A stretch of 64,000 nt of DNA, taken from NCBI GenBank assembly GCA_002269645.1, contig NIVC01003563.1, forward strand, positions 27,061-91,060, written 5' to 3'. Position numbers and translations under genes: made by a program. Positions 25,393 through 48,963 of the stretch are shown here, piece by piece; within the stretch, counting starts at the first letter, position 1, and each line of letters opens with the position of its first letter. Origin of the DNA: Macrostomum lignano (taxonomy: Eukaryota). The notes under the pieces are model-generated. The model saw only the letters and a list, made by a program, of their open reading frames with translations, searched no databases and was not told where the DNA came from.

Positions 25393-25763
25393 GTGGTGGG
25401 CACTCATTTTGGCGCCACAGGCACTCATGGCGCCACAGGCACTCATTTTGGCGCCACAGGCACTCATAGCGCCGCAGGCACTCATTGCGCCGCAGACAGG
25501 CACTCATTTTTGCGCCGCAGTCAGTCACTCATTTTGGCGCCGCAGTCAGTCACTCATTTAGCGCCGTGGTCAGTTACTCATTTTGGCGCTGCAGACAGGC
25601 ACTCACTTTGGCGCCCTAAAGCAAAATTATTGATTTCCATAACGGGTCACAAGGTGCCAGAGCTGTTGGGCGAAGGACAAAGTATTGGAGTGTCCCCCCA
25701 TAGCTTTTACTAGGGGAAACCACATGTCCCCCTGCCCATCCCTGGTGGCATTCGACGCCCCTG
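25393..25763 (-). mobile_element. Second copy of the CAGGGGCG-head element with a related ~21-bp array
   Basis: The reverse complement starts caggggcgtcgaatgccacc and aligns with 4412-4550. The array unit gtgcctgtggcgccaaaatga resembles gtgcccgcggcgctaaaatg. Confidence 0.55.
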
Positions 25764-27031: not shown

Positions 27032-27203
27032 CGCTGTGTCAGATGGACTTCAAGCATGAGTGTCAGATGGACTTCAAGAATGAGTGTCAGATGGACTTCA
27101 AGCATGACTGTCAGATGGACTTCAAGCATGAGTGTCAGATGGACTTCAAGCATGAGTGTCAGATGGACTTCAAGCATGAGTGTCAGATGGACTTCAAGCA
27201 TGA
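27032..27203. repeat. 24-bp minisatellite (gagtgtcagatggacttcaagcat), segment 1
   Basis: About 7 units, ending exactly at the left TIR of EnSpm element 1. Confidence 0.95.
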
Positions 27204-28289
27204 CCCACGTAACCAAGAATCTCGCCAAAGGCTTGCGTCCCCATCGCGTGGCAATATTAGGCGATATCTCGCCTGGCGATATCTAAGCAATATCTAAGCG
27301 ATATCGATCGGCGATAAATCAATACGATAAGAAATTGCCTCTTAAGTCCTATTATATGTCTAAAAGGCACTAAAACAAAGTTCAAACCTATATTGGCCCA
27401 TCTTGCGCGCATTCTCGTGAAATCGCCGAAACCTCGAGTTTCGATGCCTTGGCGATAATTGCACCATCGCCGAGCGATGGAACAACGTTTGGAATTCGAT
27501 CCATGCCTAATTCACATGTTTTTAGCCCACTTGACGCATAAATTTGCAATTTAAGATCCCTTTGTGAATGGTGGGTTGAAAGTGAGTGACACTCTTCAGT
27601 TTTAGCATTATTTTTTAGTCTATCGTACCGTACATTATAAACAAGTTCGTGCATCGCAGCGCGATATTTTAGCGATTGGCCTGGCACTGTTTTCAAGTTA
27701 ATTTTGAAACTTTGATTCAAATAAGATGTATATCAAGGTAAATTTGTAGTTTTAATATATGGAAGTAAAATATATGTTTGTTAGTTGTCTTGTCCTGCTT
27801 TGTGTATCTGACTGCAAAATTCATTCATTACTTTGATAAAATACGCAATAAATGTATGCTCTTTTAAAAATGACGCTGCACACGACTTAGCTAGCGCAGT
27901 TATATAATAAGTAAGACAGATTATCATCTCATGTTCCTTTAACATATTTTATACATGTCTTACGCTCAAGATTTTTTGTGAAACAAAAAACTGTGGTAAA
28001 TAGTGGTAGATAGTAAGAGTACTCCAGTGGTCAGAGTTTTATTTTGCCAAACTGTGTTTTTGGCACTTCATTTTTAGAGATTTTTCTCTTGCTCATCCAG
28101 ATGCCAATTTTGCATTTCGAAGTGTTGGTAGACGCATACTTTTAATTACATTTTTAGAATTCAAATGCATTTTGGCTCTTTTAGAGAAATTATAACTAGT
28201 ACTGAACTGAATTATAACTATTACTGAATTTACTGGACTTAGGCCCTTAATCCAGACTTAGGCCCTAAGTCCAGTAAATTCAGTAATAG

Positions 28290-29283
28290 TGTCGTAGGCC
28301 TTTTGGCTCTCTATAAGAATTTCACCGTTATGCCACCAAGTTGTCGTAGATGTTTCACCTCCTACTTTATCAATTTTACTCTCACCGCTGATACCAAAGT
28401 TGTACTAGGTGTGTTTCCTGTGCACTGAGAATCCTACTAGATGCCACCAAAGTTGTAACAGGGGTGATTCTTTCTTCTTAATAATAATTTCACACTGTCA
28501 CCAAAAGCTATCACAGGGCTAATTTACTAATCTCTTAAGTTGGTAGCTGCCACCAGGATTATCCTATTAATAAATTGTGAGTTTATCAATCTTAGAATAA
28601 TCCGAGAAATGTTTCTTAGAATAGGTCTGGGTATTTAGTCTGAGTATTTAGTCTGAGTATTTAGTCTGAGTATTTAGTCTGAGTATTTAGTCTGAGTATT
28701 AGTCTTAGAAAAAACTGTTAGCCCTGAGATTTAACTCTTCTAATTATTCTGGTAGCGTTCTATTATTCTGGTAGCGTTCTACTTAATAATGGCCTGAGCG
28801 GTATTTTGGCTTACTGGTATATGTATTTCATGTACTTTGCAAGTCCTTGGGCGTTACCGAGATCAGAGGGTCACAGCCTCCGGTTATTCTTACACTTATT
28901 ACTTCAGATCTACTTCGCAACTTCTTACTACTCAACACTTTCCTTCTCAGTAGTATATACGGTACACACTTCCGTCTACTTCACTCTTTCTTAAAAAAAG
29001 AATTAACACGGAAAACACTTCTTCAATTCTTATTTTCTCGGAACTCTTCTATTTGCTATCAATTGCTTATTGCGAACCGCGATGCGCGAGGTTGCTTCTC
29101 CCTCCGCCAAATTTGCCTGTATTTATAGTAAAATTCTATTAGATTTTTAACAAAAATTAATTCGCGTAAAATATTATCAAAAATACGAGTAGTAAAACAA
29201 AATGCGTCGTAGTTATTTGGCGTGAATTTAAAATGTAATAACCGATAGCTTTTTTAGAAAGAAATCGGGAGGGGCCCTTTACA
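28290..29283 (-). mobile_element. Solo LTR (994 bp) nested in EnSpm element 1
   Basis: TGTCGTAGGCC...GGCCCTTTACA with an ATAG duplication (28286-28289 and 29284-29287). Homologous to 53822-54481. It splits a 36-bp inverted repeat. Confidence 0.8.
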
Positions 29284-29742
29284 ATAGTTATAATTCATAA
29301 TTATAATTATGCTGTTATAATTAATAATTATAGAATTTGAAATTCATTGCTGAATTAAAATTATAAATTTATTGAAATAATGATTCACAGTGACTGCTAA
29401 GCCTAGTAGTTTTAACCTTAATACCTAGGTTAAGGTTAGCCTAGGTTAGGCCTAAGGTTAATGTAAATCTCTCTGCACATGATTTTGCTGTCAGAATTTT
29501 GCAAAAAGTGAGTTTATTGCAACCCTAAGTTAATTATATTATAACAGCACTGATGTCATCAGTGCCAACTGCCAATATAGTTGATTAGGGCCTAACTTAA
29601 ATTTCCTTCATTGTTTATTTCATTTCAACATGATCTTTGCAATTGATTAGGTTTTCATTTGGAAAATTCTAAATATTTAGCTAAGTTAGCTACAGCCTAT
29701 ATTCAACAAGTAAAAGATAGCTTTTGTGGACTTCATAAAGAT

Positions 29743-30299
29743 CCATAGTGTGGATCATGCTAAGTGCACGCGAGAAATGACCTAAACTCCTAAAGCTGAT
29801 TCCCAAAAGCACGCCGACGACAAGCGAATGCACGCCGATACACGCCAATGCACGCGCTACTAGGACAAATTCCACGCCCATTAGGACAACAATAAATTCA
29901 AATTCAAATTTAAGACAAAAAATGTATGTTGAATTTCATTGTGTAAAACAAAGCAACAAACGATGTACAAAAGAAATGATATATCTTTAAAAACGTATAT
30001 TTCTCATACATTAATTTATTAACAGTCTTATACATTGTTTATTTACAATTGATAGTTTTTTTCAAAAGTTAAATACAATAATACGTATTTTATGTCTGCT
30101 TACCATTGCATTGGTAGCTTTGCCACATCAGGTGCCAGGCACGCGGCACACGGCGCACGCCAGGCACGCCAGTGTATTTATGTAGTGTGCATTATGCAAG
30201 CCAAATGCACGCCACTTACCTAATTGCACGCCGGTGCACGCCACTTTTGAAAATGCACGCGGGAAAATTCTCGCATGCACTATATGATTTACACTATGG
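29743..30299. mobile_element. MITE (557 bp) with an 8-bp TSD (hAT- or P-type), nested in EnSpm element 1
   Basis: TIR ccatagtgt..atcat...agtgca.gcgagaa and its complement. ATAAAGAT at 29735-29742 and 30300-30307. Internal gcacgcc repeats. Confidence 0.78.
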
Positions 30300-31803
30300 A
30301 TAAAGATCAAATATTTTACTTGCTAATGTCCAAATCTTAATAAACTGTTTATGTCAAATGTCAATATTATTAATGTAAGATATTTAGTAGATTTTGGAGA
30401 ATTTTTGACAAGTGGAAATTTTTTATACCTAGCTATTGATAGTAATATTGATTTTCTTGAATAAAAAGTAAAGTGATGGGCCTTTCCAACCAAAACCCAC
30501 ATTCCCCATGGTCCTAGCTAGGGTCAAGATCATGTACTGCTATATGCCAAGACAAGAATTGTTTCTGTAGCTCATGCATGCCAATGTACACCAACAAACT
30601 TTTTATTGCATACAAAAATATGCCAAAAAAATTACAAATTATAACTAATACTAAAAGCTTGCAAAATTTAAATATTCAAACAACTTATATGTTATAACTG
30701 AAAATCCTTTTACTAAACTGTAGAGAACTAGTTTATTTTAACTATTTTTGTTTTATTTTTACTTTCTTGGAAAAGTTAAACCCAGTTTATTTATTTATTT
30801 TTCCATTTTTTTCATAAAAGGCCCACTATTTCTGATCAAAATTTAGCTACTGTAACTATGTACATGGAGACTATGCCAAATACAAACTTAATCATTTTTG
30901 TATGCTAATTATCTAGATTTATTGTTGGGACTCGGAACTTTTGGTCCCAGCTACTGGTCTCAGCAGTCTCTATATGCTAAGCTGTACACTAAGAGGGCAT
31001 GCCAGGCCCCTTTGTATGCCAAGTTGTATGCTAATGTGTAATCTAGGTCCCTCTATATGCCAGAAAATTCCGGCATACATGTATACTATCTGGAGTCTGG
31101 GGTCCTAGGTATTAAGGTTAACTTATTTTAGACTTTGAGTTTTACTTCCTGAATGCTAATTAGAAACTTATTTTATAGAATATAATAGCCTAGCAATTGA
31201 TCTTGAAATTGAATAAAAAAGCAAGTCTGTATTAAAGATCAGTTACAATGTAGGTAGCTAATAGTTTATACTATATATAGCTATATAGTTATTGTCATTT
31301 TCCTTATCTATAATTTTTGACTTAGCCATTTCCTATGCCATGGTTTTTAATATTTAGGTTAGCTACCCTCCTAGGGCTAAGCTTAGTCATTTCAAAACTA
31401 AGTTTGACTAGATCTCAATTTGCAATAAATTTTATAGTAGCTATTGATCTTAAATAGAAAAGTGGGCTTCTATTAAAGACAAGTACTATATTAATACTAT
31501 ATATTACACTTCTACCTATCTAAACACCCTGTTCCCTATATAGGTTATAGCTATGGTCCTTAGAATTGATATTAGGATTATCCTAGTTATTTTTTGTAGT
31601 AAAAATAGATGCATTATATTTGAACTCTCCATATCAAAAGACCTCTATCTAGACTAGTTACAAATTCATGAACCAATATAAAATGGAACTATTTATTTTA
31701 TATGGAACTATAATATATTATATAGATCAGTTTAACAAAAAAATGTATTTTAGAACTGCTATCCAACCTACTAATATTGATCCTTTCCTACATTTCCAAG
31801 ACA

Positions 31804-33768
31804 ATGGACAATAAACAAAGTGCACGTAGTGTTCGTCGAGCTGCACACAAGAGATTTGCTAGTATGCTTGATGAAATAGCTGCCCTGCCAAGTGATTCTC
31901 TGCATGGTGAAGAAGAAGCAGATAATGCCCAAGGATCTGCCAATGAAGAAGCTGCTTATACTTTATCTGCTGAGGGAGAGGCTGGGCAAGAGCACAATTT
32001 GCAACTTGAGGAGGAGTGGGCCATTGAGGATGAATTTGCACCAGAGGAGACAGATGATGATAGTGAAGCTGAGATGGATGGACAAACAATTGAACAAAGT
32101 TTAGCTGAATGGGCACTCAAATTTAGGGTCTCAGCTGCAGCACTAGATAGTCTGCTTCACCTACTACATAGGGCCTTTCCACAACTACCACTATCTGCAC
32201 GTACTTTGTTGCAAACACCAAGGAAAACTGCAACAGCTCCACTTTCGTCTGGGGAGTTTGTATACCTGGGAATTCGAAGTAACTTGCCTAAAGACACTCA
32301 GCTTGAAGCTCCCCTCAAGCTATCAATTGGCATTGATGGCCTGCCTATCTTCAAAAGCAAAAATGAAGGCTTCTGGCCTATTCTTGGTTCATTTCCACAA
32401 TCATGTCCATTTGTGATTGCTTTGTTTTTTGGAGTCAACAAACCAGAAGTTTGTGGATTTCTGAAGGATTTGGTGGCTGAACTTCAAGATCTCAAGGACC
32501 AAGTAGTTCTAGAGAAAGTCATTGCAGACCGTCCAGCAAGGGCATTGATCAAGTGCATCAAGGGCCATAGTGGTTACTCATCCTGTGACAAATGTACCAT
32601 TCATGGGGAGTACCATCAGCAGGTAGTGTTTGATGAGCTCAATTGCCCATCAAGGACTGATGCCTCCTTTCGAGAGAAGCATGACCCAAATCACCACATA
32701 GGGGACCACCCAAGCCCCTTTGAAGAACTGCCAATAGACATGGTGCATGCATTCCCCTATGACTATATGCACTTAGTTCTGCTTGGAGTCATGCGCCGGC
32801 TCTTCCTCTACTGGATTCAGGGACCACTGGCTACTCGATTTGGCCATCGGCTAGTAGACTGTCTTTCCGAGAATCTATGCAGCCTTCGAAACTATTTTCC
32901 AACAGAGTTTGCAAGGAAGCCACGGTCTTTAAGCTGCTTGAAGTTCTGGAAGGCAACTGAATTTCGCTCATTTTTGCTGTACAGTGGTGTTACTGTAATG
33001 AACAATACTAGGGGAATAAGCCGAAGGATCCTCAAGAACTTTCTACTGTTGCATTCTGCTATTTTTATTTTATGTGATCCCCTTTCCAATGTAGTTTTAA
33101 TACAGTATGCCAGTCAGCTCCTTAATCATTTCATCAGTGATTGTAAGACCACTTATGGATCTCATATGTTGGTCTATAATGTACATTCATTGTCCCACTT
33201 GGCAAATGATTGCTTACGGTATGGCTGTCTTGACAATTTTAGTGCATTTACTTTCGAGAATTTTATGCAGACACTAAAAAAGTGTGTTCGAGGCAGTCGC
33301 CTTCCGCTTATTCAATGTGTTAATAGAATTCGGGAACTTGCCGTATATGAAGCAAGGGTTGAGGCTCTTTGCACTGAGGCAGTAGTCTTTAAGTTTCTTT
33401 TGGCAGATGCCCACCTGCCCATAGGAGTGAGTAGGTTCTCCTGCTGCATTATAAATGGTATTCGCTTTTCCTCAAACATCAATGACTGTCACTTTTTTGA
33501 CCGTGAATACTGCTGCTACCAGATTTGCCACTTTCTTACTTCTGGAAGCTCCTATGAAGTTGTTTGCAAGCGCTATAAGAAGTACTCCAGTGCATATGAT
33601 TACCCATTTGATTCCCGTAAGATACATGTCTATTGTGTTTCTGGACTCTCATCTAAGTTGCTCACTGTTCCCCTCTCCAGAATGTTTAGGAAGGCATGCA
33701 TTTTGCCCTACCAGCAGACTTTCTTGAAACAGTATGCTTACCCACTGTTTGCCACTCTCTGGAAGTGA
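31804..33768 (+). CDS. EnSpm/CACTA (Tnp2/Transposase_21-like) DDE transposase
   Basis: Motifs IDGLP..S...WPI, ADRPARA, CDKC (C2C), DYMH, WKATEFRSF, HSLSH (H3H), SAFTFEN. The ORF is uninterrupted; first ATG at 31804. Confidence 0.92.
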   Translation: MDNKQSARSVRRAAHKRFASMLDEIAALPSDSLHGEEEADNAQGSANEEAAYTLSAEGEAGQEHNLQLEEEWAIEDEFAPEETDDDSEAEMDGQTIEQSLAEWALKFRVSAAALDSLLHLLHRAFPQLPLSARTLLQTPRKTATAPLSSGEFVYLGIRSNLPKDTQLEAPLKLSIGIDGLPIFKSKNEGFWPILGSFPQSCPFVIALFFGVNKPEVCGFLKDLVAELQDLKDQVVLEKVIADRPARALIKCIKGHSGYSSCDKCTIHGEYHQQVVFDELNCPSRTDASFREKHDPNHHIGDHPSPFEELPIDMVHAFPYDYMHLVLLGVMRRLFLYWIQGPLATRFGHRLVDCLSENLCSLRNYFPTEFARKPRSLSCLKFWKATEFRSFLLYSGVTVMNNTRGISRRILKNFLLLHSAIFILCDPLSNVVLIQYASQLLNHFISDCKTTYGSHMLVYNVHSLSHLANDCLRYGCLDNFSAFTFENFMQTLKKCVRGSRLPLIQCVNRIRELAVYEARVEALCTEAVVFKFLLADAHLPIGVSRFSCCIINGIRFSSNINDCHFFDREYCCYQICHFLTSGSSYEVVCKRYKKYSSAYDYPFDSRKIHVYCVSGLSSKLLTVPLSRMFRKACILPYQQTFLKQYAYPLFATLWK

Positions 33769-34585
33769 TCTCTGATTATTAACAGGTGACGTTTCTATCC
33801 TTCAGTGCCATGGTAATTTGTCACAGCAGTTTTTGGTGCTTGGTGTTGACACAGTTTTTAATTTTTGCTTGGTTGTTGGTGCAGTATTTAATTGGTGTTA
33901 GACACTTTAATCCAATGACATACGAGGGTTGTCCAGCAAAATATAGGACTGTGCTCATTGCTCATTTCTATTCATGTGTATCATGAAAATTCATTTCATA
34001 CTATAAAGAGCAACTATCAATTAGTCTATGGCTAAAGCCTAAAATAAAGTATTAAAATATTTAATTTAATTTATTTTAAATAGAATATATTAAAATATAT
34101 GGCACCTGTCCTATATTTCACTGGACACCCCTCATAAGTTTGTGTAATGATAAATTGTCAACAGATCCAATTTCAACCATAAGCATTGTAGCAACCAAAT
34201 AAATTGGTAAACTTTTGCATTACGGAAATTTTACACAGTTTTACTCAATTTTACTCAGTAGATACAATTTATGGCCATGAAATGTATTTCATACTCATAA
34301 TGTATTGTCTCATACATGTTTACATGTCAAATGTAAAGTAAGTTATTTTTTTCTCCAATTCCCTCAACTATTCTATATGCTTTAACAATGCTTCTATATT
34401 GTTAAAGAGCTTTTGATTGTTGCTTTGATTTTCCAACATTAAGTTTGCTCATATTGTATGAGTTGAATAAGAAGAGGCAAAGCTTAAGATTTTAGCGTCG
34501 TGTGGAACAAAAATGCTAGTTTTACTGGTTTAATAAAATTTGTTCACATCTTTATTTATGCGAGCAATTATATCTTTTCCTTCAG

Positions 34586-36506
34586 CTGTTCTACATTCTT
34601 GACTTTGGGGGGCAGTTTGTCGAGTATGCTCCCGAAGCATGGATGATCGGCCTAAGAACATGCCAATGGCCTCGAGTGAGCAACGAACGACTGAAGGTAC
34701 TCCGAAGCAAAGGTTCCATTCCGGAGACTGACTGGGAGACCCACTCCTGTACTATCCTGTCGAAGTGTGGTAAATACTTTAAGTTCTAGACTTCCTTTGA
34801 ATTACTTATTCGGTGACTAATTGAACTGCATACTTCTGATTATAGTAGCCTATATATATGTTAGATTGTTTACTAGAATATAGTAAAACTTTCAAAGATA
34901 GCAGCATGGCATCGCTAGAATGCAGGCTATACATGAAGGTAGATCATAAAATTTCAGGATACTTTTGTGATGGATTATATGATAGATGTGCGCAACATTG
35001 CCTCTAATTGGTTTGTTTTACATGTGGATGTGCAATTTGATTTTTCCCTTCAGACAATGAAGTTACGGCGCGTAGACGATGCAAGAAAGCCGAGGCTGGC
35101 CAGGACGAACTTACTACGGATGCCGAACAACCTCGTCGTCGATCACAGACTTCGCGTTTCGTCGAGGAGGTGCCACCAGAGAGCCGGCGGCGCCGGTTAT
35201 CCTCTGACTCGGCCGATTCGGGGACTGCGACAACCAAGCGTAAGCGCTCCTCATCAAAGCGCTCCCAACCGACGCCTTCGGTCAGATCGGACTCGGAGTC
35301 GGGTTCTGAGTCGGGTTCGGAGACAGCCATGCCTCCTCCGTTTCCAGGCCAACCGGCGACTCATCCCCAGTCGAACGGCTCTACAGGCTGCGGTACTCCT
35401 ACTCCGGCCGACTGCCATGTTCTAACAACGGAGCAGTCCCGCGAGAGTTCTACAGGAGGAGCAATGGCTGCTAGTATTACCACACCTTCCAGGCCTTCGA
35501 AGGCTGCTTCGACGCCCGCTGTCGCCTCCATGATCATGACGCCTCGGCACACACTAGACTCTGCACAGAGTTCTGCGAACATGGGCCTGTCACGTAAGTC
35601 AAAAGCTTAGCTTTCAAGTGTATCGTGACTCAGGGAAAAGCTATAGTATAAAAAAATTATGCACAATTTGTATCGGTCATCCTGAATTTGTTGTAGGTTT
35701 TGAGGTCAAAGTCCTACGGGAGCTGGCGTCCATCCGTGAGACTGTCGAAGTCATCACAAGAAAGCTGTCGGTCATTTCGAATGGACTACACCAACAGGAC
35801 CTACCGGACATTCCCCACTGCCTGCCAGTCAAGTCGATGGAGCAAATGGACAGTCTGCTCGAGTGGCTTGGGGACAAGAAGCATGAGAAACTAATGGTAA
35901 GAAAAATTGTTCAATGCTCATATACCTGCTGTATATAAAAGTTATACTAACTTTTAGTCCTGAAGTATAGAACCGAATCTTTAGGTTACTCAACTTTTAT
36001 TTTCTAGGCAGTTACTGCATGGTCAGTAAAAATCGTTTAAGTCTTCTTGGGTACACAGAAAAGGCCTTGTTTTTAATTTGAGTGCCAAGTTTTATTTATT
36101 CAGGTTTACAAATTCTGTAGGCGTATTTTAGTACAGTAATTTTTCTGTGCAGTGCACAACATAAATTGTTTTGAAGAGTTAACCCAAACAAGTGCTCAAA
36201 ATTTTCTGTCATTCACAAATTTGCCCATTCTAGGCACAAAAACTGGCCCACGTGGGTGGTAAGGATGCGAGGGAGCTCATTAGAAGAATGCTTCGTAATG
36301 TCGTGGCAGCCGAGGTGCTACTACAATTTAACTTCACTGGTGTTGGTCCGAAGAAGGCATTCAAGAATACAACTCTCCACAGGGTAGTTGTCAGGGCTGC
36401 TCGTCTGGGCAACACCATGTTTACGGACAAGGAGATTGATGATTCAATCGCCCACAGTCTGATGCATGCGGGTGATATTCTGCGCAAGCATGATAAGTCG
36501 AAGTAA
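34586..36506 (+). CDS. Spliced transposon accessory protein, DUF4806-like C-terminus
   Basis: Exons 34586-34769, 35054-35593, 35697-35896 and 36234-36506 have GT-AG ends and consistent phases (1,1,0), giving 398 codons. N-terminal EYAPEAW...CQWP; C-terminal LPVKSMEQM...GGKDARELIRRML...FNFTG..KKAF. The start-codon exon was not identified. Confidence 0.8.
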
Positions 36507-37408
36507 CTGGAATTTTACCTTGTTACATTTAATTTTTCCATTGTGAAGTAACCAATATTCACTGTCGAATTGCTTGTTAAAGAAGTCGGAAATACTTATT
36601 AATATTTAATATTTGGTTATTTAGTCATCTGGGTTTTTTGCCTTAGACTTAGTCATGTAATGACATGACCGTCATTCTATTAGCATGACCAAATTGAGAC
36701 GGGTTCATGCCAGCCTGGTATTATCAAGAAATTTTATTGTTATGAGTGTCATTTTGACTTGGCTTAGGGTTTAAAGAGCAACAATTGATAAAGTTCCGAA
36801 TTTCGAGTCATTTAAAGATTCTGGGAGTCTGACAAGAATGCATTATACTTGTCAAACTTGTCAAACGTATGTTTTATCTTATTGCCAACCAGCCCAGCAT
36901 TTGTCTTCAATATTTGTCAAATGAAAGTCTTTAGTGCTCAAGTTTAACTATTGCAATTTTTCTCCTATATTATATTTTTCTCTCCCTGCCTGCTGCATAT
37001 TTATAGCTGAATTTTCACCATACATGCTGCTAGAAGTAGCATCATTAGAAGTGAAATATATATTAAAAATTGAAAGTGGCATTAATAAGAACTTGTGGAA
37101 TTTTCGTCCCCAGCGACTTGAAGGATAGCTATAAGCCATCTGATGGAATAATAAATTTGCAGTAATGAGCTGTGTCTGTTGATTCTTTCAATAATTTTTA
37201 ATGCTATCATTTAAACCAGAATTATAACTGTATCGTCAATTCATCGCCAATTGCTCGCCAAACGATATCGCCGGGCGATACGGGACGATATCGCCCCTGC
37301 GGACAGCCGCGATATTTCGGCGAGATAAGGGCGATCGCTCGGCGATGTTTAGACGAATCGCCGGGCGGTATCGCCCCGATGTGGAGGCGAGGTTTTTGGT
37401 TATGTGGG

Positions 37409-37947
37409 GAGTGTCAGATGGACTTCAAGCATGACTGTCAGATGGACTTCAAGCATGAGTGTCAGATGGACTTCAAGCATGAGTGTCAGATGGACTTCAA
37501 GCATGAGTGTCAGATGGACTTCAAGCATGAGTGTCAGATGGAAATCAAGCATGAGTGTCAGATGGAAATCAAGCATGAGTGTCAGATGGACATCAAGCAT
37601 GAGTGTCAGATGGACATCAAGCATGAGTGTCAGATGGACATCAAGCATGAGTGTCAGATAGACATCAAGCATGAGTGACAGATGGACATCAAGCATGAGT
37701 GTCAGATGGACTTCAAGCATGAGTGTCAGATGGACTTCAAGCATGAGTGTCAGATGGACATCAAGCATGAGTGACAGATGGACATCAAGCATGAGTGTCA
37801 GATGGACTTCAAGCATGAGTGTCAGGTGGACATCAAACATGAGTGTCAGGTGGACATCAAGCATGAGTGTCAGATGGACTTCAAGCATGAGTGTCAGATG
37901 GACTTCAAACATGAGTGTCAGATGGACATCAAGCATGAGTGTCAGAT
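37409..37947. repeat. 24-bp minisatellite, segment 2 (between the two transposons)
   Basis: About 22 units, resuming in phase after the GA TSD and stopping at the AT TSD. Confidence 0.97.
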
Positions 37948-38377
37948 CCCTACTCTCCTTGCATGGATAAATCATGGATGAAGCATCCATGATGCCATGT
38001 ATGGATCATACCTGAACATGTATGGAGCCATACCTGATCATACATGGTTCCACGTAAACTTCATCCATGGTTACTTTCCATCCATGTACATTGATGTATG
38101 ATTTTAAATATAATTTTCCTTACTACACTACTGTTAGTAGAACGCAATGTTTGCGTAGGTTCATTTTAAAGCTGAAATTTTCTAAACAAATTCGGCAGCA
38201 TCTTTAGTGCTGCTGAGAAATATGTTTCCATTCCCTTATAAATCACTTTCAAAACAAAAAAGTATCAGAACAAATACTTATGCAATTAAATGTAGAAGTA
38301 ATTGAAAACTCGTATGATGACCATTTCGAGACTTATATTATTAATGATAATTAGGCATAATTCATTTCAAAGTACTG

Positions 38378-38912
38378 TAAGAAAAAATAAGACAGCTCAG
38401 TCTCAGAGAGCTTTAAAATACAGAATGGACAGAATTTGACGCATTTCAAGGTACTGTAAGAAAAAATAAGACAGCTCAGAGAGCTTTAAAATACAGAATA
38501 GACAGAATTTGACGCATTTCAAGGTACTGTAAGAAAAAATAAAACAGCTCAGAGAGCTTTAAAATACAGAATAGACAGAATTTGACGCATTTCAAGGTAC
38601 TGTAAGAAAAAATAAAACAGCTCAGAGAGCTTTAAAATACAGAATAGACAGAATTTGACGCATTTCAAGGTACTGTAAGAAAAAATAAAACAGCTCAGAG
38701 AGCTTTAAAATACAGAATAGACAGAATTTGACGCATTTCAAGGTACTGTAAGAAAAATAAAACAGCTCAGAGAGCTTTAAGATACAGAATAGACAGAATT
38801 TGACGCATTTCAAGGTACTGTAAGAAAAAATAAAACAGCTCAGAGAGCTTTAAGATACAGAATAGACAGAATTTGACGCATTTCAAGGTACTGTAAGAAA
38901 AAATAAAACAGT
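38378..38912. repeat. 73-bp tandem repeat inside EnSpm element 2
   Basis: About 7 copies of caaggtactgtaagaaaaaataaaacagctcagagagc...gacgcattt. Confidence 0.9.
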
Positions 38913-39240
38913 AAATTTTACTGAACAGTCAATAAATAGAATTAGCCGAATTCGGTACGCATTAAGGGCAAGGGCCGACTAATCCTTTACGAAACGAAGT
39001 TAATGCTGCATTAGTCAATTATTTGCGCACAGAAACTTGGAGATTTTGAATATGGAGAGATCGGACAAAGAGAGGTAACGGTGGGAGTCTGAGAGGGAGG
39101 AAGTTGGGCATCTGGAAAGTTATTCTGATTCCCTGATGGTTTTATCTTGGTCATGGAGCATAATTTTATTTTCTGCCAGACTTTGCAGCATTAATAATAA
39201 AATAATCGGATCTAAGGTACGGACACATACTCGTACCTTT

Positions 39241-41541
39241 TTAATCATGTTCAAACTCTTTGAACAATGGCACAGCGCAATAACAGTCTTTGCTGAACGA
39301 TTCTACTGGAACAGCGATGCAGGGTCGATCGACCTCTGAAAAATTAACTATACGTTCGCGTCTGGCCGATCTGGGCGCATTAGACAGGGATATCAATACA
39401 AAATTGAATGTCGAAGACTTTTTGAACATGGATTCCAGCAATGCTTTCCAATTAAGTAAATCGATGGGGAAAGTTGCTGCTGGTACTCGTAAAACAAAAT
39501 CAAACAGCGAACCAATGGGATCCAAAATTTGCACTCGAATAGTATTAGGCTCGAGGAACTCTGCAATAGTGCAGATTTCGCCGGACTTCAATTGGCAAAG
39601 ATGGTTAGAATTTTTCGACGCACAAGCTGAGCTTGTCGAGAAAAAATGTCCATTAAAATAAGCAAGTGAGTTTCGAAGAATACCATGTGGCCTGGATGGC
39701 TCTAAAGATATAGAGTTAACTGCATCCACTACAATAGAGTCCTTAACACAAGAAAAGTAGTGATGTAGCAACTTTTGAAACAAAAACTTGCGAACAAGCT
39801 GTGGGCCAAATGACACAGTTCCGCATAAGAACTTTTTGAACATGCCAATGGAGCTCTCAAATGCGAACATAGAATAATTAAATACAGGTCCGTACAATTC
39901 GTACTGTTCAGCCATATGCAAAAGCAGGTGGAAATTAAGGCGGAGTACTTTCGGTCCGAATATTTGCTGAGCATTGGAGATAAAAGCTTTGCATAGCTTT
40001 TCGATATCAGTCTTATTTGATTGGGGGCTATACAACATGTGATAAATAAGAACTAAATTAGTTAACAGCAGTTTCAATGGAAAATGCGAAATTCTCTGCA
40101 AAAACGTAGGAAGAAGAAAGTATAGCGCAAAGTTTTTAAAATGCTTTGCTTTCCAATCTGAAAAGCCTTTAAAATTTGTGTTGATTGTGATGCTAGAAGG
40201 AGTTATAGATTGACGAATACAATTAGATATGAAATCCATGCAATTAGCTGAGCAAAAATACAACTCGCGCCTGTTTGCAGGTAATGACAGCTCTTCTAGT
40301 AGATACTTGGTGTGGCCTTCGAAAAAGCAGTGTAAACTGTCAATAGGATTGCAGCTGGGAAACGGAACATAGTCTAACAAGCAACTGCGCATCTTTACGC
40401 CAAAAACAGGCCGATTTCGAATTTGTGCGAGCCGACAGTGTTCAAGATGGGAAGATGGGTTTCTCAAAGGAAACAAGTAGCCTTCACCATAGCGGAAGAT
40501 CCAGTTTTTACCTTTCTCGGATACTTTAAAGCTCTCACCTGGGTGCAAGCACCTAGGACAGCTAAACGCACCATTGTACTGGTGAATGCAGAAGAGCTTA
40601 GCAAGAGCGGGCAAGTCACAAACAAAGAGTGTGTAATGGACATGAACGGTGTATTCCGAGAATATAAACTGTTTTGGCAAATTGTTCATAATTTCAGACA
40701 GAAAAGACTGGAAATGCGGGACTGCCTTCGATGAAACAAGAGCAATTAGAATTAAATTTGCAAAGCGTTGACGGATGTAAACAGGAAGGTTTAGAAGTTG
40801 AGCCTGAAATGGCCAATGGCTACTCTGAACAGATTCAAAAAAATTGGCGCCATCAGCTGAGATTAGAAGATGCAAGTGAAGCGACTTGCCAGAAGATAGG
40901 CTTAAGCCTTGTTCTTTAACTATTTTGGAATTCAAAACGTCTGTGTTTTTATCCTTTTGCAATTCTTGCTCATACTGCAGAATAGTTGAAGTGTGGCTGC
41001 TTAAGATAGTCCGCAGCTGTGGAACAATATTGAGCTGTGTCACAGCAACCTTTGACTTTGGGGAATGAACCTGACACTGGCTTTTGCATTCTGGGCAAAA
41101 GCCAAATTCAGACACGTCACTATCATCAAGAGGGCAAGTATCTTGAATCAATGATTTGAGCAACTTGACGCTATTTGGAAGAGCTAGAGAATCTCTACTA
41201 AAAATAGAAAGTAGCTTCAGGAGTCTATCAAGAGCAGCCTCTGAAACTCCGGAAGTAATTGCCCACTGAAAAATCAGAGCCGCCTGCACACTGGGATCTG
41301 AGATGGAAGCCAAATTCGCTAAGCTATCTGAACTCTCCTCAAGCACAGGCACAGCATTGTTTTCACCAATAAAAGTTTCCACAGCGTCAGGACAGCTGTG
41401 CGAGTGCGTTACACCGGCTTCGCTTGAAATTGAACTCCTATTACTTGTAGAAAAACTATTTGAGGGAGAAGAAATCGCCTGACAAGAGTAGGCTGAGTAA
41501 TTAGTAGAAAGAGAGTGCTCAGATTCTGATTTACTAGACAT
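39241..41541 (-). CDS. EnSpm/CACTA DDE transposase (766 aa)
   Basis: Motifs SADGANFF.S...HWP, CDLPALAK, CPRC (C2C), IDSLH, WKAKHFKNF, HLLLH (H3H), SMFAFES. The ORF is uninterrupted. Confidence 0.92.
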   Translation of the reverse strand: MSSKSESEHSLSTNYSAYSCQAISSPSNSFSTSNRSSISSEAGVTHSHSCPDAVETFIGENNAVPVLEESSDSLANLASISDPSVQAALIFQWAITSGVSEAALDRLLKLLSIFSRDSLALPNSVKLLKSLIQDTCPLDDSDVSEFGFCPECKSQCQVHSPKSKVAVTQLNIVPQLRTILSSHTSTILQYEQELQKDKNTDVLNSKIVKEQGLSLSSGKSLHLHLLISADGANFFESVQSSHWPFQAQLLNLPVYIRQRFANLILIALVSSKAVPHFQSFLSEIMNNLPKQFIFSEYTVHVHYTLFVCDLPALAKLFCIHQYNGAFSCPRCLHPGESFKVSEKGKNWIFRYGEGYLFPLRNPSSHLEHCRLAQIRNRPVFGVKMRSCLLDYVPFPSCNPIDSLHCFFEGHTKYLLEELSLPANRRELYFCSANCMDFISNCIRQSITPSSITINTNFKGFSDWKAKHFKNFALYFLLPTFLQRISHFPLKLLLTNLVLIYHMLYSPQSNKTDIEKLCKAFISNAQQIFGPKVLRLNFHLLLHMAEQYELYGPVFNYSMFAFESSIGMFKKFLCGTVSFGPQLVRKFLFQKLLHHYFSCVKDSIVVDAVNSISLEPSRPHGILRNSLAYFNGHFFSTSSACASKNSNHLCQLKSGEICTIAEFLEPNTIRVQILDPIGSLFDFVLRVPAATFPIDLLNWKALLESMFKKSSTFNFVLISLSNAPRSARRERIVNFSEVDRPCIAVPVESFSKDCYCAVPLFKEFEHD

Positions 41542-41590
41542 AAAAATAGCAATTCAAATATTCAAAAGTTACTAGAATTTTTTCCGCAAT

Positions 41591-43541
41591 TCACGGTCCC
41601 ATTCGCCTTGAGCGGGAAATGGAATCCCCTGACTCGGGTCCAGAAGCAGCAGTTGAAGTTCGCTTTCTCGCCCGTGTCTCCTCCCTGGCCAGCTGATTGA
41701 GATGGTCTCGTACAGACTTCCAGATTTCGTGGAAGTCGTAGCCAGATGTTCGATAGCACAATTGAAGCAAACCTGAAAATTCACGAGTATAGTAAAATAT
41801 TTTTACAATAGACATTGTGTACTGTGTTTATAGTAGAAATAGGCTAAATTTAAAAGGAAGTTGATTTATGATGCTAATCATTAAATAGGTCAATGGGATG
41901 TATTGAACTTTAGAACTATTTTTCCTCAATTTCTTTTATCTCAGACCTAAATGTGTTTTTTTAGAAAATATCCCAAGTATTGGATTCAGATCATTTAGCA
42001 TTAATTAGCCTAAATTGCTTTATAATAAAAAAATTGCACAAAACTGTGAAAAAATTATATATATATATTTACGTTGAAACTCTGTCACATGCTCAGATGG
42101 AGCAGGCCTTCGGGAACTGCGAGCACCACAGGATGAATCGATTATATGCTCAAGCAAGTAGCCTTCGCCAAATCGCAGCTTGATATACCTTCGGAGGAAC
42201 ACCTTAGGATCGTTGCAAAGAATTGAAGACAGCTCAGCTAGGGAACCATCAATGCACCTAAATTCCTAAAAAATGTTATTATATAGTAGAACTTTTATAC
42301 TACAGACGTGATGCTGCTGATGCTAAGAAAAAACTGACATACCTCATTTTGGTATTCTTTAATTGTTAGCATTCCACCAAAGTTGTCATCCTTTTTTAAA
42401 AGTCGGCATATCCTTGCAGCAAGACGCTTCTCAAGAGAAAGCAACTCGGATTGAATGAACAGTTTTAGATCTAGAGTAAGATATATGCTCATATATAAAA
42501 ATATGGTGATTTTGATTTTTAATAATGTGATTGTATCATATTAAAAAAATAAAATTATACATTTCATTGTTGCATCCGATTCACTGTTTACTATCTGTAC
42601 CCCTCGGAGGGGTTGCACTTCTTGAATTGCACCTAGTGATAAAAAAGGCTTATTGCTACAAAAATATTGACTCATTTGGTATTTGGTTTTCAATTAGGTG
42701 TAATAGAATATACAAACTTGATTCCAAGAGGCCTGTGGCACGAGCTTGCTCATTTTCAACCAAAGATGCCTCTCTCTCAAATGCAGAAATGGCTTTTTCT
42801 AAAAAATAATAATTAATCAAATAATACAACAAAAAAAACAAATTGCAAACAATTAATAGTTCATATATATTGCAGTTTTACCCATTGATTGAGTAGCTGG
42901 TATCGCCAAATTTGGTTCGCCACTTTCACTATCCACTTCATAAAGCTCGTCAAGTAGTCCATGCTGATGACAACTAGAACTTGAAGCAACCTGCTTTGAA
43001 CTAGATGACCTTATTGTCCTTACATTTGCAATGCCAGCTTGGGGATCTTTCATTGCAAAAAGCTCAATAGCTTGGCTAATCAATGAATCAGTATTTTCAG
43101 CCTCACTAACCAAGTTGGAAAGTTGGTTCATAGTTGAAGCCATTTGCCTTTCACTACCTTTTGCCACAAGTGTAGCAGAAAATAGTTTGCCATACATGCG
43201 TAAAAAGACTTTAGTCCCCTAAAATATAATTTAATAAAGTAATATTACATTTGTAGTTGGAATAATTTGTTTTAGAAACCATGTACTCAATAACAAAATA
43301 TTATGCATATAAATCCAACTTAAAATCTTACTTGTGCAAGTTCCAACTTTTCATCATTAGTTATTGTACTTGGCCAATAGGGAGACCCAAATGCAATGGT
43401 CACATATTGCTCATCATGGCCAACATTGTGAAGAATAAAGCAGAAAAACAATGCTGAATTGTCATTTCCAAATTTAGAAGTACTTTTTGTCTGCTTTCGA
43501 AGAGGCCTAGAATTAGATGCACTTAATCCAATATCATCCAT
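41591..43541 (-). CDS. Six-exon transposon accessory protein (376 aa) with a BEN-like C-terminal domain
   Basis: Exons 43541-43332, 43218-42882, 42798-42718, 42470-42343, 42265-42073 and 41772-41591 have GT-AG ends and consistent phases (0,1,1,0,1). The C-terminus KVFLRRYIKLRFGEGYL...EIWKSVRDHLNQLAR resembles a BEN pattern. Confidence 0.75.
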
Positions 43542-44677
43542 AACAATTTGTTCTGAAAAAGTTTCACAAGGAGATAAGGTTTGAAGAATCAATCAAGAGG
43601 CCAATGACAAACCAATTAGAATTGTATATAAAAAAAATTTAATGTAGGGACCCTAGGCCCCTATGATTTTAAATAAAAATTATAATATAAGGCCTAGGCC
43701 CTATATATAGGCCTATAATTATAAAGTTGTGCCATTGTGGATTTTCTGATACAAAGTAGACAATATTAGGCCTAATTGGGCCTAGTCTAGTCTAGTTTTG
43801 ATTATAGACTGTATATTAGATACAAAGGACATGAAAGGTCTCGAAATTAAGTACCAATTACCATAATATACTATTATTTTTTATTATTTTGAAACTGTCA
43901 GCCTACCATGTGATTTTTATCATTAGGCTATGGCCTAGGTCTAGGATGCCACTTTAGACTAGGCCTTTGGCTTTGGTTAGGCCAACCTATCATTATAAAA
44001 ATGCAGCAAAATATCATTCAAAAATATACATCTAACCCCTATAGGTTATCTTTGCATCCCAAATATAATATATAATAGGGTTTCTATTTTCTAATATATC
44101 TACAAATACAATTTTCACTGAAGGAGTGAAGATCAAATTAGCATGTCAAAAAACCTTACAAGCCACCGAATTTTAAAACTAGCTACCAAAAGTGGAACTG
44201 GAAGTATATAGCTAAGAAAAAACATAAACATAAACATAGCACATAGTGACACATAATGAAATGATGACAACATGCAAGAGTGACAGAGTCCTCTTAGAAA
44301 GGAAAAATAGGCCTAGTAATTTATGTTTATGGGAAGTTAAGTCCGTAATTAACTAAACCGAAACAAAATGGCCAACAAAATTGCTGGTAATATATTCAAA
44401 GCAATTTGTAGGTGAAGATTTTAACAAATTTATTAAACTATTTTTTGTATTTACAATTTCGCTTTTATTAAATATATTTAAAACTTTATTAGATATACAT
44501 AAAATAGCCTGAAATTTTTTATAAGCTTAGTTATTTATTTTCCCGTATGAACTCCCTGACATGGATGATTTTACCATGGAAAGTTTTAAAAATCCATGCA
44601 TGAAAATACCATGAACATGCATGATTTATCAATGGATCATGGATCATAGATGATTTATCCATGATAAGAGAGTAGGG

Positions 44678-44945
44678 ATGGACTTCAAACATGAGTGTCA
44701 GATGGACTTCAAGCATGAGTGTCAGGTGGACATCAAACATGAGTGTCAGGTGGACATCAAGCATGAGTGTCAGATGGACTTCAAGCATGAGTGTCAGATG
44801 GACTTCAAACATGAGTGTCAGATGGACATCAAGCATGAGTGTCAGATGGACTTCAAACATGAGTGTCAGATGGACGACATCAAGCATGAGTGTCAGATGG
44901 ACATCAAGCATGAGTGTCAGATGGACTTCAAGCATGACTGTCAGA
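44678..44945. repeat. 24-bp minisatellite, segment 3
   Basis: About 11 units, resuming in phase after the AT TSD. Confidence 0.95.
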
Positions 44946-44949
44946 TTAA

Positions 44950-47212
44950 CACCAAGCATCAGTGTCAGATGGAGGCCGAGGGCAATCAAGCATCAGTGTC
45001 AGATGGAGGCCGAGGGCAATCAAGCATCAGTGTCAGATGGAGGCCGCGAGGGCAATCAAGCATCAGTGTCAGATGGAGGCCACGAGGGCAATCAAGCATC
45101 AGTGTCAGATGGAGGCCGAGGGCAATCAAGCATCAGTGTCAGATGGAGGCCGAGGGCAATCAAGCATCAGTGTCAGATGGAGACCGAGGGCAATCAAGCA
45201 TCAGTGTCAGATGGAGGCCGCGAGGGCAATCAAGCATCAGTGTCAGATGGAGGCCGAGGGCAATCAAGCATCAGTGTCAGATGGAGGCCGAGGGCAATCA
45301 AGCATCAGTGTCAGATGGAGACCGAGGGCAATCAAGCATCAGTGTCAGATGGAGGCCGAGGGCAATCAAGCATCAGTGTCAGATGGAGGCCGAGGGCAAT
45401 CAAGCATCAGTGTCAGATGGAGGCCGAGGGCAATCAAGCATCAGTGTCAGATGGAGGCCGAGGGCAATCAAGCATCAGTGTCAGATGGAGACCGAGGGCA
45501 ATCAAGCATCAGTGTCAGATGGAGGCCGAGGGCAATCAAGCATCAGTGTCAGATGGAGGCCGAGGGCAATCAAGCATCAGTGTCAGATGGAGGCCGAGGG
45601 CAATCAAGCATCAGTGTCAGATGGAGGCCGAGGGCAATCAAGCATCAGTGTCAGATGGAGGCCGAGGGCAATCAAGCATCAGTGTCAGATGGAGACCGAG
45701 GGCAATCAAGCATCAGTGTCAGATGGAGGCCGAGGGCAATCAAGCATCAGTGTCAGATGGAGGCCGAGGGCAATCAAGCATCAGTGTCAGATGAAGGCCG
45801 AGGGCAATCAAGCATCAGTGTCAGATGGAGGCCGAGGGCAATCAAGCATCAGTGTCAGATGGAGACCGAGGGCAATCAAGCATCAGTGTCAGATGGAGAC
45901 CGAGGGCAATCAAGCATCAGTGTCAGATGGGTCGAGGGCAATCAAGCATCAGTGTCAGATGGAGACCGAGGGCAATCAAGCATCAGTGTCAGATGGAGGC
46001 CGCGAGGGCAATCAAGCATCAGTGTCAGATGGAGGCCGAGGGCAATCAAGCATCAGTGTCAGATGGAGGCCGAGGGCAATCAAGCATCAGTGTCAGATGG
46101 AGACCGAGGGCAATCAAGCATCAGTGTCAGATGGAGGCCGAGGGCAATCAAGCATCAGTGTCAGATGGAGGCCGAGGGCAATCAAGCATCAGTGTCAGAT
46201 GGAGGCCGAGGGCAATCAAGCATCAGTGTCAGATGGAGGCCGAGGGCAATCAAGCATCAGTGTCAGATGGAGGCCGAGGGCAATCAAGCATCAGTGTCAG
46301 ATGGAGGCCGAGGGCAATCAAGCATCAGTGTCAGATGGAGGCCGAGGGCAATCAAGCATCAGTGTCAGATGGAGGCCGAGGGCAATCAAGCATCAGTGTC
46401 AGATGGAGACCGAGGGCAATCAAGCATCAGTGTCAGATGGAGGCCGAGGGCAATCAAGCATCAGTGTCAGATGGAGGCCGAGGGCAATCAAGCATCAGTG
46501 TCAGATGAAGGCCGAGGGCAATCAAGCATCAGTGTCAGATGGAGGCCGAGGGCAATCAAGCATCAGTGTCAGATGGAGACCGAGGGCAATCAAGCATCAG
46601 TGTCAGATGGAGACCGAGGGCAATCAAGCATCAGTGTCAGATGGGTCGAGGGCAATCAAGCATCAGTGTCAGATGGAGACCGAGGGCAATCAAGCATCAG
46701 TGTCAGATGGGTCGAGGCCGAGGGCAATCAAGCATTAGTGTCAGATGGAGGCCGAGGGCAATCAAGCATCAGTGTCAGATGGAGGCCGAGGGCAATCAAG
46801 CATCAGTGTCAGATGGAGGCCGAGGGCAATCAAGCATCAGTGTCAGATGGAGGCCGAGGGCAATCAAGCATCAGTGTCAGATGGAGGCCGAGGGCAATCA
46901 AGCATCAGTGTCAGATGGAGGCCGAGGGCAATCAAGCATCAGTGTCAGATGGAGGCCGAGGGCAATCAAGCATCAGTGTCAGATGGAGGCCGAGGGCAAT
47001 CAAGCATCAGTGTCAGATGGAGGCCGAGGGCAATCAAGCATCAGTGTCAGATGGAGGCCGAGGGCAATCAAGCATCAGTGTCAGATGGAGGCCGAGGGCA
47101 ATCAAGCATCAGTGTCAGATGGAGACCGAGGGCAATCAAGCATCAGTGTCAGATGGAGGCCGAGGGCAATCAAGCATCAGTGTCAGATGGAGGCCGAGGG
47201 CAATCAAGCATC
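44950..47212. repeat. 34-bp minisatellite (cagtgtcagatggaggccgagggcaatcaagcat)
   Basis: About 2.3 kb homogeneous array. The long ORFs here arise because the unit has no stop on the + strand. Confidence 0.97.
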
Positions 47213-48860: not shown

Positions 48861-48963
48861 AGACCTTGCATGTAACCTGCCGATGTTTTCTGTCACCGCG
48901 CTTACAGTCTATTGGTAAATGTCGTTCAGGCATCTTAGGCCTTCATTAGAGACTCCATCGCTA

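What the first reader, a model, noticed from the sequence alone, without database searches (positions are those of the whole stretch)
27032..44945. Two different EnSpm/CACTA transposons inserted independently into the same short 24-bp minisatellite: candidate minisatellite-targeting system
Seen: a ~1-kb array (27032-27203, 37409-37947, 44678-44945) is broken twice, about 540 bp apart, by elements with different TIRs, lengths and orientations. Each has CCC ends and a clean 2-bp TSD taken from the repeat unit (GA at unit positions 1-2, AT at positions 10-11), and the array resumes in phase. Known: animal CMC/EnSpm elements have CCC or CAC ends and 2-bp TSDs; sequence-targeting DNA transposons exist (Dada) but I know of no minisatellite-targeting EnSpm. 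Inference: two independent hits in so small a target suggest targeting or a strong safe-haven effect.
Basis: partly seen in the sequence, partly recalled or inferred. Interest (0 to 1): 0.85.

Follow-up and report, generated by a model that had tools for sequence, protein, structure and literature searches.

The report
Two transposons in one flatworm minisatellite
Two different young cut-and-paste (CACTA/CMC-type) transposons really did land 539 bp apart in one minisatellite of the flatworm Macrostomum lignano, but other copies sit in tandem arrays no more often than the genome's ~15% repeat background, so this looks like coincidence, not targeting.

Summary
E1 (27204-37408, TSD GA) and E2 (37948-44677, TSD AT) are complete elements with CCC...GGG ends inserted in phase into one 24-bp-unit array. 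The window is Macrostomum lignano contig NIVC01003563.1. Both encode intact CMC (CACTA/Mirage/Chapaev)-type DDE transposases only 24% identical to each other. A second contig (L013) carries the same locus with E1 at the same site but no E2. It is an exact empty site, so E2 is a real, later insertion and the locus is not an assembly chimera.

Of 15 independent CCC...GGG / 2-bp-TSD insertions outside this locus, 2 lie in arrays (13%). The background is 16.5% in the sampled DNA and 15% genome-wide as published. None of the other loci contains the 24-bp unit. The array is also about 3.3 kb, not 1 kb, because it continues as a related 34-bp-unit array to 47212.

An in-array probability of 40% or more is rejected (P=0.03). 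A weaker preference is not excluded, and one other locus (L015) also shows two such elements about 270 bp apart in one array. Verdict: ordinary nested insertion in a repeat-rich genome, involving apparently uncharacterised, probably active CMC families. Interest is low.

The parts
27036..27203 (.). Left segment of the 24-bp-unit minisatellite (7 units). Its last two bases (27202-27203, GA) are the left copy of the E1 TSD.
   Evidence: TRF. Sequence.
27204..37408 (+). E1: a 10,205-bp autonomous CMC-type DNA transposon. TIR CCCACGTAACCAAGAATCTCGCC / CCCACATAACCAAAAACCTCGCC. Subterminal GGCGATA / CGATATC motifs occur 8 times each in the terminal 600 bp and 0 times in the 9.6-kb interior.
   Evidence: Independent copy with the same boundaries and a TT TSD in L009. 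Same insertion on a second contig, L013.
31804..33768 (+). E1 transposase ORF (654 aa from the first ATG; the listed ORF starts at a TTG at 31777). It keeps D178-G, D242-x-PA, C261-x2-C264, H461-x3-H465 and E485.
34586..36506 (+). E1 second gene, spliced, 397-398 aa in the public annotation. No Pfam domain, and no homolog outside M. lignano. Coordinates are converted from the L012 gene call at 12786-14706.
28291..29282 (.). A 992-bp secondary insertion inside E1 with a 6-bp TSD AATAGT (28285-28290 and 29283-29288). Absent from the E1 copies in L009 and L013.
37409..37947 (.). Middle segment of the minisatellite (22.5 units). 37409-37410 (GA) is the right E1 TSD copy. 37946-37947 (AT) is the left E2 TSD copy.
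37948..44677 (-). E2: a 6,730-bp autonomous CMC-type DNA transposon. TIR CCCTACTCTCCTTGCATGGATAAATCAT... Subterminal CATGGAT motifs occur 9 times in the terminal 600 bp and 2 times in the interior. It carries an internal 73-bp minisatellite at 38363-38911.
   Evidence: Eight other copies at 99.5% identity or more. Exact empty site in L013.
39241..41541 (-). E2 transposase ORF, 766 aa. Pfam DUF1258 (3.5e-14), with weaker DUF4218 and Transposase_21 hits. It is 100% identical to M. lignano protein P0001.
44678..44973 (.). Right segment of the 24-bp-unit minisatellite (about 12 units). 44678-44679 (AT) is the right E2 TSD copy.
44953..47212 (.). Contiguous 34-bp-unit derivative array (66 units) that shares caagcatSagtgtcagatgga with the 24-bp unit. 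It is part of the same composite target.
   Evidence: Present at about half this length in L013.

Best explanation
Two unrelated-by-descent insertion events of ordinary cut-and-paste DNA transposons. E1 and E2 belong to two distant families of the CMC (CACTA/EnSpm-Mirage-Chapaev) superfamily. Each encodes an intact DDE transposase and has a TIR with CCC...GGG tips plus arrays of subterminal short motifs, which are presumably the transposase binding sites. Integration makes a 2-bp staggered cut with little sequence preference, and repair of that cut gives the 2-bp TSD.

E1 entered a roughly 3.3-kb intergenic composite minisatellite first, before the two assembled versions of this locus separated. 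E2 entered the window's version later, and so did a 992-bp element inside E1. That both landed in one array is best read as coincidence, helped by tolerance. Tandem arrays make up about 15% of this genome and about 20% of this window, and an insertion there harms nothing and persists. No targeting mechanism is needed.

Shown: the boundaries, the TSDs, the order of events, the empty site, the transposase motifs and the in-array rate of other copies. Inferred: the 2-bp staggered-cut mechanism, transposase binding to the subterminal motifs, and current activity.
For: Source and redundancy:
- The source is M. lignano assembly GCA_002269645.1.
- The genome paper reports 15% simple plus tandem repeats and 180 Mb of duplicated blocks at 95% identity or more (PMC5730564).

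E2 copies:
- Eight other copies are at least 99.5% identical and carry the identical 766-aa ORF.
- TSDs are GA, TG, TA, TG, TA, TA and TC.
- Only L008 is in an array.

E1 copies:
- The independent copy in L009 has a TT TSD and non-repetitive flanks.

Sister families:
- L010 (CA), L011 (TC) and L014 are not in arrays.
- L015 (TA) is in an array.

Other elements of the same kind:
- A TIR scan found two more CCC...GGG / 2-bp-TSD elements, neither in an array.

Tally: 2 of 15 insertions in arrays against a background of 0.165; P(>=2)=0.73. The 24-bp unit is absent from every other locus.

Order of events: L013 is the same locus with E1 and the same GA TSD, but without E2 and without the 992-bp insert. 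The array pattern across the empty E2 site is identical, with 1 mismatch in 34 units.

Transposases: the catalytic D, D, CxxC, HxxxH and E are invariant in a 13-sequence alignment. Pfam hits among the members are DUF4218 (10 of 13), Transposase_21 (6 of 13) and DUF1258 (5 of 13).
Against: The sample is small: 15 insertions, and only one independent E1 copy outside this locus. A roughly two-fold preference for arrays therefore cannot be excluded. The background was measured in DNA next to other insertions, although it agrees with the published genome-wide 15%.

Counting the discovery locus gives 4 of 15 transposase-ascertained insertions in arrays (27%, P=0.23).

One other locus, L015, repeats the picture: two different CCC...GGG elements about 270 bp apart in one 20-bp-unit array.
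Confidence: 0.8

Rival explanations
1. CMC elements of this kind have a moderate regional preference, for tandem arrays in general or for particular 'hot' arrays. Possible causes are accessible or unusual DNA structure, break-prone arrays, or attraction to an element already resident. This would produce clusters of CCC...GGG elements within a few hundred bp.
For: There are two double hits among the three independent arrays that carry a transposase-ascertained element: the window, and L015 with elements at 5870-13392 and 13665-16487 in one array. Counting the discovery locus, 4 of 15 insertions are in arrays. L003 and L011 lie within 200 bp of arrays.
Against: Outside the discovery locus the in-array rate is 2 of 15, at or below background. 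About 25-26% of the sampled DNA lies within 200 bp of an array anyway. L015's second element was found only because it splits an array, a detection route that has no equivalent outside arrays. Under the uniform TIR scan, the extra elements are 0 in arrays and 2 outside.
Confidence: 0.13
2. Sequence-specific targeting of the 24-bp unit gagtgtcagatggacttcaagcat by both transposases, analogous to Dada.
For: Only the two hits in this one array.
Against: The two elements cut at different positions in the unit (GA and AT). Their transposases are only 24% identical. None of the 13 other loci contains the unit or its 12-mer core. TSDs and flanks of the other copies show no shared sequence.
Confidence: 0.01
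3. Assembly artefact: the contig was joined through the repeat, so the two elements are not really neighbours.
For: PacBio-era assemblies of a genome this repetitive and redundant are error-prone.
Against: A second, independently assembled contig (NIVC01002061.1, L013) has the same E1-array junctions on both sides. Its array, with the same order of unit variants, runs straight across the E2 site and on into the same downstream sequence. E2 has a perfect 2-bp TSD taken from that pattern.
Confidence: 0.02

Closest known systems
Animal CACTA/EnSpm elements of the CMC superfamily with 2-bp TSDs (e.g. ENS1_Cis of Ciona savignyi, as described in PMC6004678)
   Same: [quoted passage not shown] 2-bp TSD. 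TIR plus subterminal repeated motifs. Large autonomous elements, and in E1 an extra gene.
   Different: The termini are CCCAC... (E1) and CCCTAC... (E2), not the 'invariable' 5'-CAC...GTG-3'. E1 carries CAC two bases in. E1's second gene has no known homolog.
Mirage / DUF1258 proteins of Caenorhabditis (Pfam PF06869)
   Same: The E2 transposase and its sister families match DUF1258 above the Pfam cut-off (53.4 bits against 33.1; 5 of 13 alignment members). From my own memory, unverified here, Mirage elements make 2-bp TSDs.
   Different: No phylogeny with Repbase Mirage references could be built here. E1 does not match DUF1258.
Chapaev / Chapaev3
   Same: Same superfamily, and widespread in animals, as are E1's homologs in beetles, fishes and a sea cucumber.
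   Different: Chapaev makes 3-4-bp TSDs (TWA in Chapaev3) and has CAC...GTG termini. Here all 13 insertions with both junctions read have 2-bp TSDs of varied sequence.
   Same: Only the superficial picture of repeated hits in one repeated sequence.
   Different: In those families essentially every copy sits in the target sequence. Here 13 of 15 other insertions lie outside arrays, and none is in the 24-bp unit.

Membership tests
CMC (CACTA/EnSpm-Mirage-Chapaev) superfamily | [quoted passage not shown] | tested here: met
   In E1 numbering, D178, D242, C261-x2-C264, H461-x3-H465 and E485 are invariant in the 13-sequence alignment that includes both window proteins. The pairwise E1/E2 alignment covers the same core.
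CMC (CACTA/EnSpm-Mirage-Chapaev) superfamily | Match to the curated transposase models (Pfam Transposase_21/Tnp2, DUF4218) | tested here: inconclusive
   E2 matches DUF1258 above the cut-off, but DUF4218 (23.0 bits against 27) and Transposase_21 (17.9 against 28.6) fall below theirs. E1 has no direct hit. Its homologs hit DUF4218 (10 of 13 members) and Transposase_21 (6 of 13) at E<=0.01.
CMC (CACTA/EnSpm-Mirage-Chapaev) superfamily | TSD of 2-5 bp | tested here: met
   A 2-bp TSD in all 13 insertions with both junctions read, confirmed by the empty site in L013.
CMC (CACTA/EnSpm-Mirage-Chapaev) superfamily | Termini 5'-CA...TG-3' / CAC...GTG ('in most cases') | tested here: not met
   The termini are CCC...GGG: CCCACG (E1), CCCTAC (E2), CCCTAG (sister families). 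The empty site and the independent copies fix the outermost bases. The literature gives this feature as usual, not obligatory.
CMC (CACTA/EnSpm-Mirage-Chapaev) superfamily | Subterminal arrays of short repeated motifs next to the TIRs (classical CACTA architecture; my own knowledge) | tested here: met
   E1: GGCGATA / CGATATC occur 8 times each in the terminal 600 bp and 0 times in the interior. E2: CATGGAT occurs 9 times against 2.
Chapaev lineage | 3-4-bp TSD and CAC...GTG termini (PMC4079192) | tested here: not met
   2-bp TSDs and CCC termini.
piggyBac (considered because of the CCC...GGG ends) | TTAA target and TSD; piggyBac-type transposase domain | tested here: not met
   The TSDs are 2 bp and varied. 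Pfam shows no piggyBac transposase domain.
Tc1/mariner (considered because of the 2-bp TSD) | TA target dinucleotide; Tc1/mariner DDE/D transposase | tested here: not met
   TSDs include GA, AT, TG, TC, CA and TT as well as TA. There is no Tc1/mariner Pfam hit.
Target-specific DNA transposon (minisatellite-targeting system) | Most copies inserted in the target sequence, well above its genomic share | tested here: not met
   2 of 15 independent insertions outside this locus are in arrays, against a background of 15-16.5%. 0 of 13 other loci contain the 24-bp unit. An in-array probability of 0.40 or more is rejected at P=0.027.

The most novel reading that the evidence does not exclude
Certain minisatellite arrays in M. 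lignano act as integration hot spots for CCC...GGG CMC transposons, through DNA structure, chromatin or break-proneness. Different families would then pile up within a few hundred bp of each other, as seen in this window and again in L015, even though most copies land elsewhere.
Probability: 0.1. Interest if true: 0.55.

Novelty: new member of a known kind. Interest (0 to 1): 0.2.

Why it matters
The proposed minisatellite-targeting system would have been a new kind of target choice for DNA transposons, and the evidence here does not support it.

What remains is modest. There are at least three uncharacterised, very young CMC families in a regeneration model organism. They have identical intact transposase ORFs on nine contigs and a documented filled/empty polymorphism between duplicated loci, so they are probably still active. 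That could interest people building transposon tools for M. lignano transgenesis, or people studying genome instability in its duplicated karyotype.

The locus is also a clean textbook case of dated, nested insertions, with an exact empty site preserved in a paralogous copy.

Tried and rejected
- Zebrafish or another fish as the source was my first guess from the sequence style. The protein search rejected it.
- L012 as an independent E1 copy: it is the window itself.
- L013 as an independent E1 copy: it is the same insertion in a duplicated or allelic locus. It was not counted as independent, and was used as the empty site for E2.
- L003 'split array' at 21532-22094: this is a degenerate continuation of one array, not an insertion.
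- First TIR scan: it wrongly dropped elements whose TSD begins with G or ends with C. It was fixed and rerun. Candidates inside long perfect inverted repeats (L004 77-8734, L007 905-6177) were discarded because they are not termini.
- Pfam on E1's second-gene ORFs and on E2's small ORFs found nothing usable.
- A search with E1's second gene to find more E1 copies returned only the same M. lignano cluster.
- A profile search against PDB sequences gave no hit.
- The DNA collections open to pattern search (viral, metagenome, prokaryote) do not hold this genome, so the genome-wide TIR census could not be run.
- Literature searches found no prior description of these families, and no report of minisatellite-targeting CMC elements.
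Full report
**1. The observation**

TRF finds a 24-bp-unit array in three pieces: 27036-27203, 37409-37947 and 44677-44973. Reading the junctions gives the following.
- E1 junctions: ...caagcatGA|CCCACGTAACCAAGAATCTCGCC ... GGCGAGGTTTTTGGTTATGTGGG|GAgtgtcag...
- E2 junctions: ...gtgtcagAT|CCCTACTCTCCTTGCATGG ... CCATGATAAGAGAGTAGGG|ATggacttc...

E1 is therefore 27204-37408 (10,205 bp, TSD GA) and E2 is 37948-44677 (6,730 bp, TSD AT). Each TIR occurs only at its two ends in the window, against 0 expected by chance. The array continues in phase across both elements.

One correction is needed. At 44953 the 24-bp array runs without a break into a related 34-bp-unit array that extends to 47212. The target is therefore a composite array of about 3.3 kb, not about 1 kb.

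**2. What the elements are**

Each element carries one long ORF.
- E1: 31777/31804-33768 on the + strand (663 or 654 aa).
- E2: 39241-41541 on the - strand (766 aa).

The E2 protein matches Pfam DUF1258 above the cut-off, and matches DUF4218 and Transposase_21 (Tnp2) weakly. The E1 protein has no direct Pfam hit. It aligns with the E2 protein over the catalytic core (24% identity, E=1e-9). It has more than 2,000 animal homologs, several of them annotated as transposase, DUF4218 or Transposase_21.

In a 13-sequence alignment, D178-G, D242-x-P-A, C261-x2-C264, H461-x3-H465 and E485 (E1 numbering) are invariant. [quoted passage not shown] Among the 13 members, 10 hit DUF4218, 6 hit Transposase_21 and 5 hit DUF1258.

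Both elements also have CACTA-like subterminal motif arrays.
- E1: GGCGATA / CGATATC occur 8 times each in the terminal 600 bp and 0 times in 9.6 kb of interior.
- E2: CATGGAT occurs 9 times in the terminal 600 bp and 2 times in the interior.

Two-bp TSDs are already known for animal CACTA elements (PMC6004678). Repbase files Chapaev and Mirage under EnSpm/CACTA. The CCC...GGG tips depart from the usual CAC...GTG, and Chapaev proper (3-4-bp TSD) is excluded.

**3. Source and a second version of the locus**

The E2 protein is 100% identical to a Macrostomum lignano protein. The window is the last 64 kb of contig NIVC01003563.1 of assembly GCA_002269645.1, because L012 equals window 21801-43782 at 100% identity.

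Contig NIVC01002061.1 (L013) carries the same locus.
- Its flanks are 97-99.6% identical to the window.
- E1 sits at the same site with the same GA TSD.
- It lacks the 992-bp segment at 28291-29282, and it lacks E2.

I removed E2 and one TSD copy from the window and laid the two arrays side by side. All 34 units match in order and variant type except for one base. L013 is thus an exact empty site for E2. This proves that E2 is a true insertion with a 2-bp TSD, dates it after E1, and rules out an assembly chimera. The genome paper reports 180 Mb of duplicated blocks at 95% identity or more in this assembly (PMC5730564), which explains why a second version exists.

**4. The test of targeting**

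The exact E2 protein is encoded on eight other contigs (L001-L008). Those copies are at least 99.5% identical to the window's E2.
- Their TSDs are GA, TG, TA, TG, TA, TA and TC. L004 has only one readable junction.
- Only L008 is inside an array, a 22-bp unit, about 13 bp from the array's end.

E1 has one independent copy, in L009, with a TT TSD and non-repetitive flanks. A search with E1's second gene found no further copies.

The sister families, with transposases 62-63% identical to E2's and the TIR CCCTAGACTCC, give four more insertions.
- L010 (TSD CA), L011 (TSD TC) and L014 are not in arrays.
- L015 (TSD TA) is inside a 20-bp-unit array.

A uniform scan of all sampled DNA for CCC...GGG TIRs with 2-bp TSDs recovered every known element. 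It also found two new non-autonomous ones, L003:331-2443 and L006:3046-6254, neither in an array.

The tally outside the discovery locus is 2 of 15 insertions in arrays (13%). Arrays with a period of at least 10 bp and a length of at least 100 bp occupy 16.5% of the sampled non-element DNA. The published genome-wide figure for simple plus tandem repeats is 15%. P(>=2 of 15 | p=0.165) is 0.73, so there is no enrichment. An in-array probability of 0.40 or more would give 2 or fewer of 15 with P=0.027.

The 24-bp unit and its 12-mer core are absent from every other locus.

**5. What remains open**

L015 shows a second CCC...GGG element (13665-16487, TIR CCCTAGTTGACAAT, TSD TA, no ORF) about 270 bp from the first, in the same array. 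This repeats the window's picture. I do not treat it as evidence for targeting, for three reasons.
- It was found by a route (a split array) that has no counterpart outside arrays.
- The uniform scan finds 0 extra elements in arrays and 2 outside.
- After excluding the discovery locus, one extra element in about 5 kb of hit arrays is not significant.

With this sample size, however, a roughly two-fold preference or a few hot-spot arrays cannot be excluded. I give that reading about 0.1-0.13.

**6. Context**

The window is not a gene desert. It holds host genes:
- a teneurin-like EGF protein at 25-2892
- Es2 at 15989-17410
- an RRM protein at 22266-24620
- a C-type lectin at 60694-61632

The intergenic DNA is dense with minisatellites: 20% of the window once E1 and E2 are removed. 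The locus has taken at least three insertions in succession: E1, then E2 and the 992-bp element. This fits neutral accumulation in harmless DNA.

**7. Verdict**

The elements are correctly recognised as CMC/EnSpm-type and as independent insertions. Minisatellite targeting is not supported. The most likely account, with confidence 0.8, is two ordinary cut-and-paste insertions with a near-random 2-bp target that coincide in a large array of a genome that is 15% tandem repeats. Novelty lies only in the element families themselves: young, probably active, CCC-tipped and apparently undescribed. Interest is 0.2.

Noticed in passing
window 28291-29282: A 992-bp insertion inside E1 with a 6-bp TSD AATAGT (28285-28290 / 29283-29288). 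It has no TIR and contains a 13-bp tandem repeat at 28625-28705. It is absent from the E1 copies in L009 and L013, and its element type is unknown.
   Followed up: partly
L015 13665-16487: A 2.8-kb ORF-less CCC...GGG element (TIR CCCTAGTTGACAAT, TSD TA) about 270 bp from a 7.5-kb autonomous sister-family element (5870-13392). Both lie inside one 20-bp-unit minisatellite. This is a second 'double hit' locus.
   Followed up: partly
window 38363-38911: E2's internal 73-bp minisatellite varies in copy number among the nine otherwise near-identical E2 copies.
   Followed up: no
window 48956-49245 and 56148-56436: Long inverted repeats (96-99-nt arms, 71-89% complementary) about 7 kb apart, just downstream of the array cluster. 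This is probably another large TIR element, and it is shared with L013 at least as far as 51415.
   Followed up: no
window 58979-60317: A foldback-like structure. Arrays of the 14-bp unit CGACGTTTGCCAGC lie in inverted orientation (231-nt arms, 97% complementary, 659 nt between the arms), directly upstream of a C-type lectin ORF (60694-61632).
   Followed up: no
window 25399-25615; L008 6177-6863; L010 ~6020-6075: The same minisatellite family (GGCACTCATTTTGGCGCC...) recurs at unrelated loci. It is the array hit by E2 in L008, and three degenerate units lie about 55 bp from the L010 insertion. It may be an abundant dispersed repeat or part of a mobile element.
   Followed up: no
window ~34586-36506 (+): E1's second, spliced gene (397-398 aa, serine-rich N-terminal part) has no Pfam domain and no homolog outside M. 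lignano. It may be a lineage-specific accessory protein, comparable in position to TnpA of En/Spm.
   Followed up: partly
L003 331-2443; L006 3046-6254: Two further non-autonomous elements with perfect 20-nt CCC...GGG TIRs and 2-bp TSDs (CT, AA). This suggests a diverse population of this transposon type in M. lignano.
   Followed up: no
L001 4034-7356; L005 5533-7828; L004 below 8812: Three E2 copies are themselves interrupted by other insertions, of 3.3 kb, 2.3 kb and a long-inverted-repeat element respectively. This shows how frequent nested insertions are in this genome.
   Followed up: no
window 44953-47212 vs L013 16573-17704: The 34-bp-unit array is about twice as long in the window (2.26 kb) as in the paralogous or allelic copy (1.13 kb), so array length is polymorphic between the two versions.
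   Followed up: no
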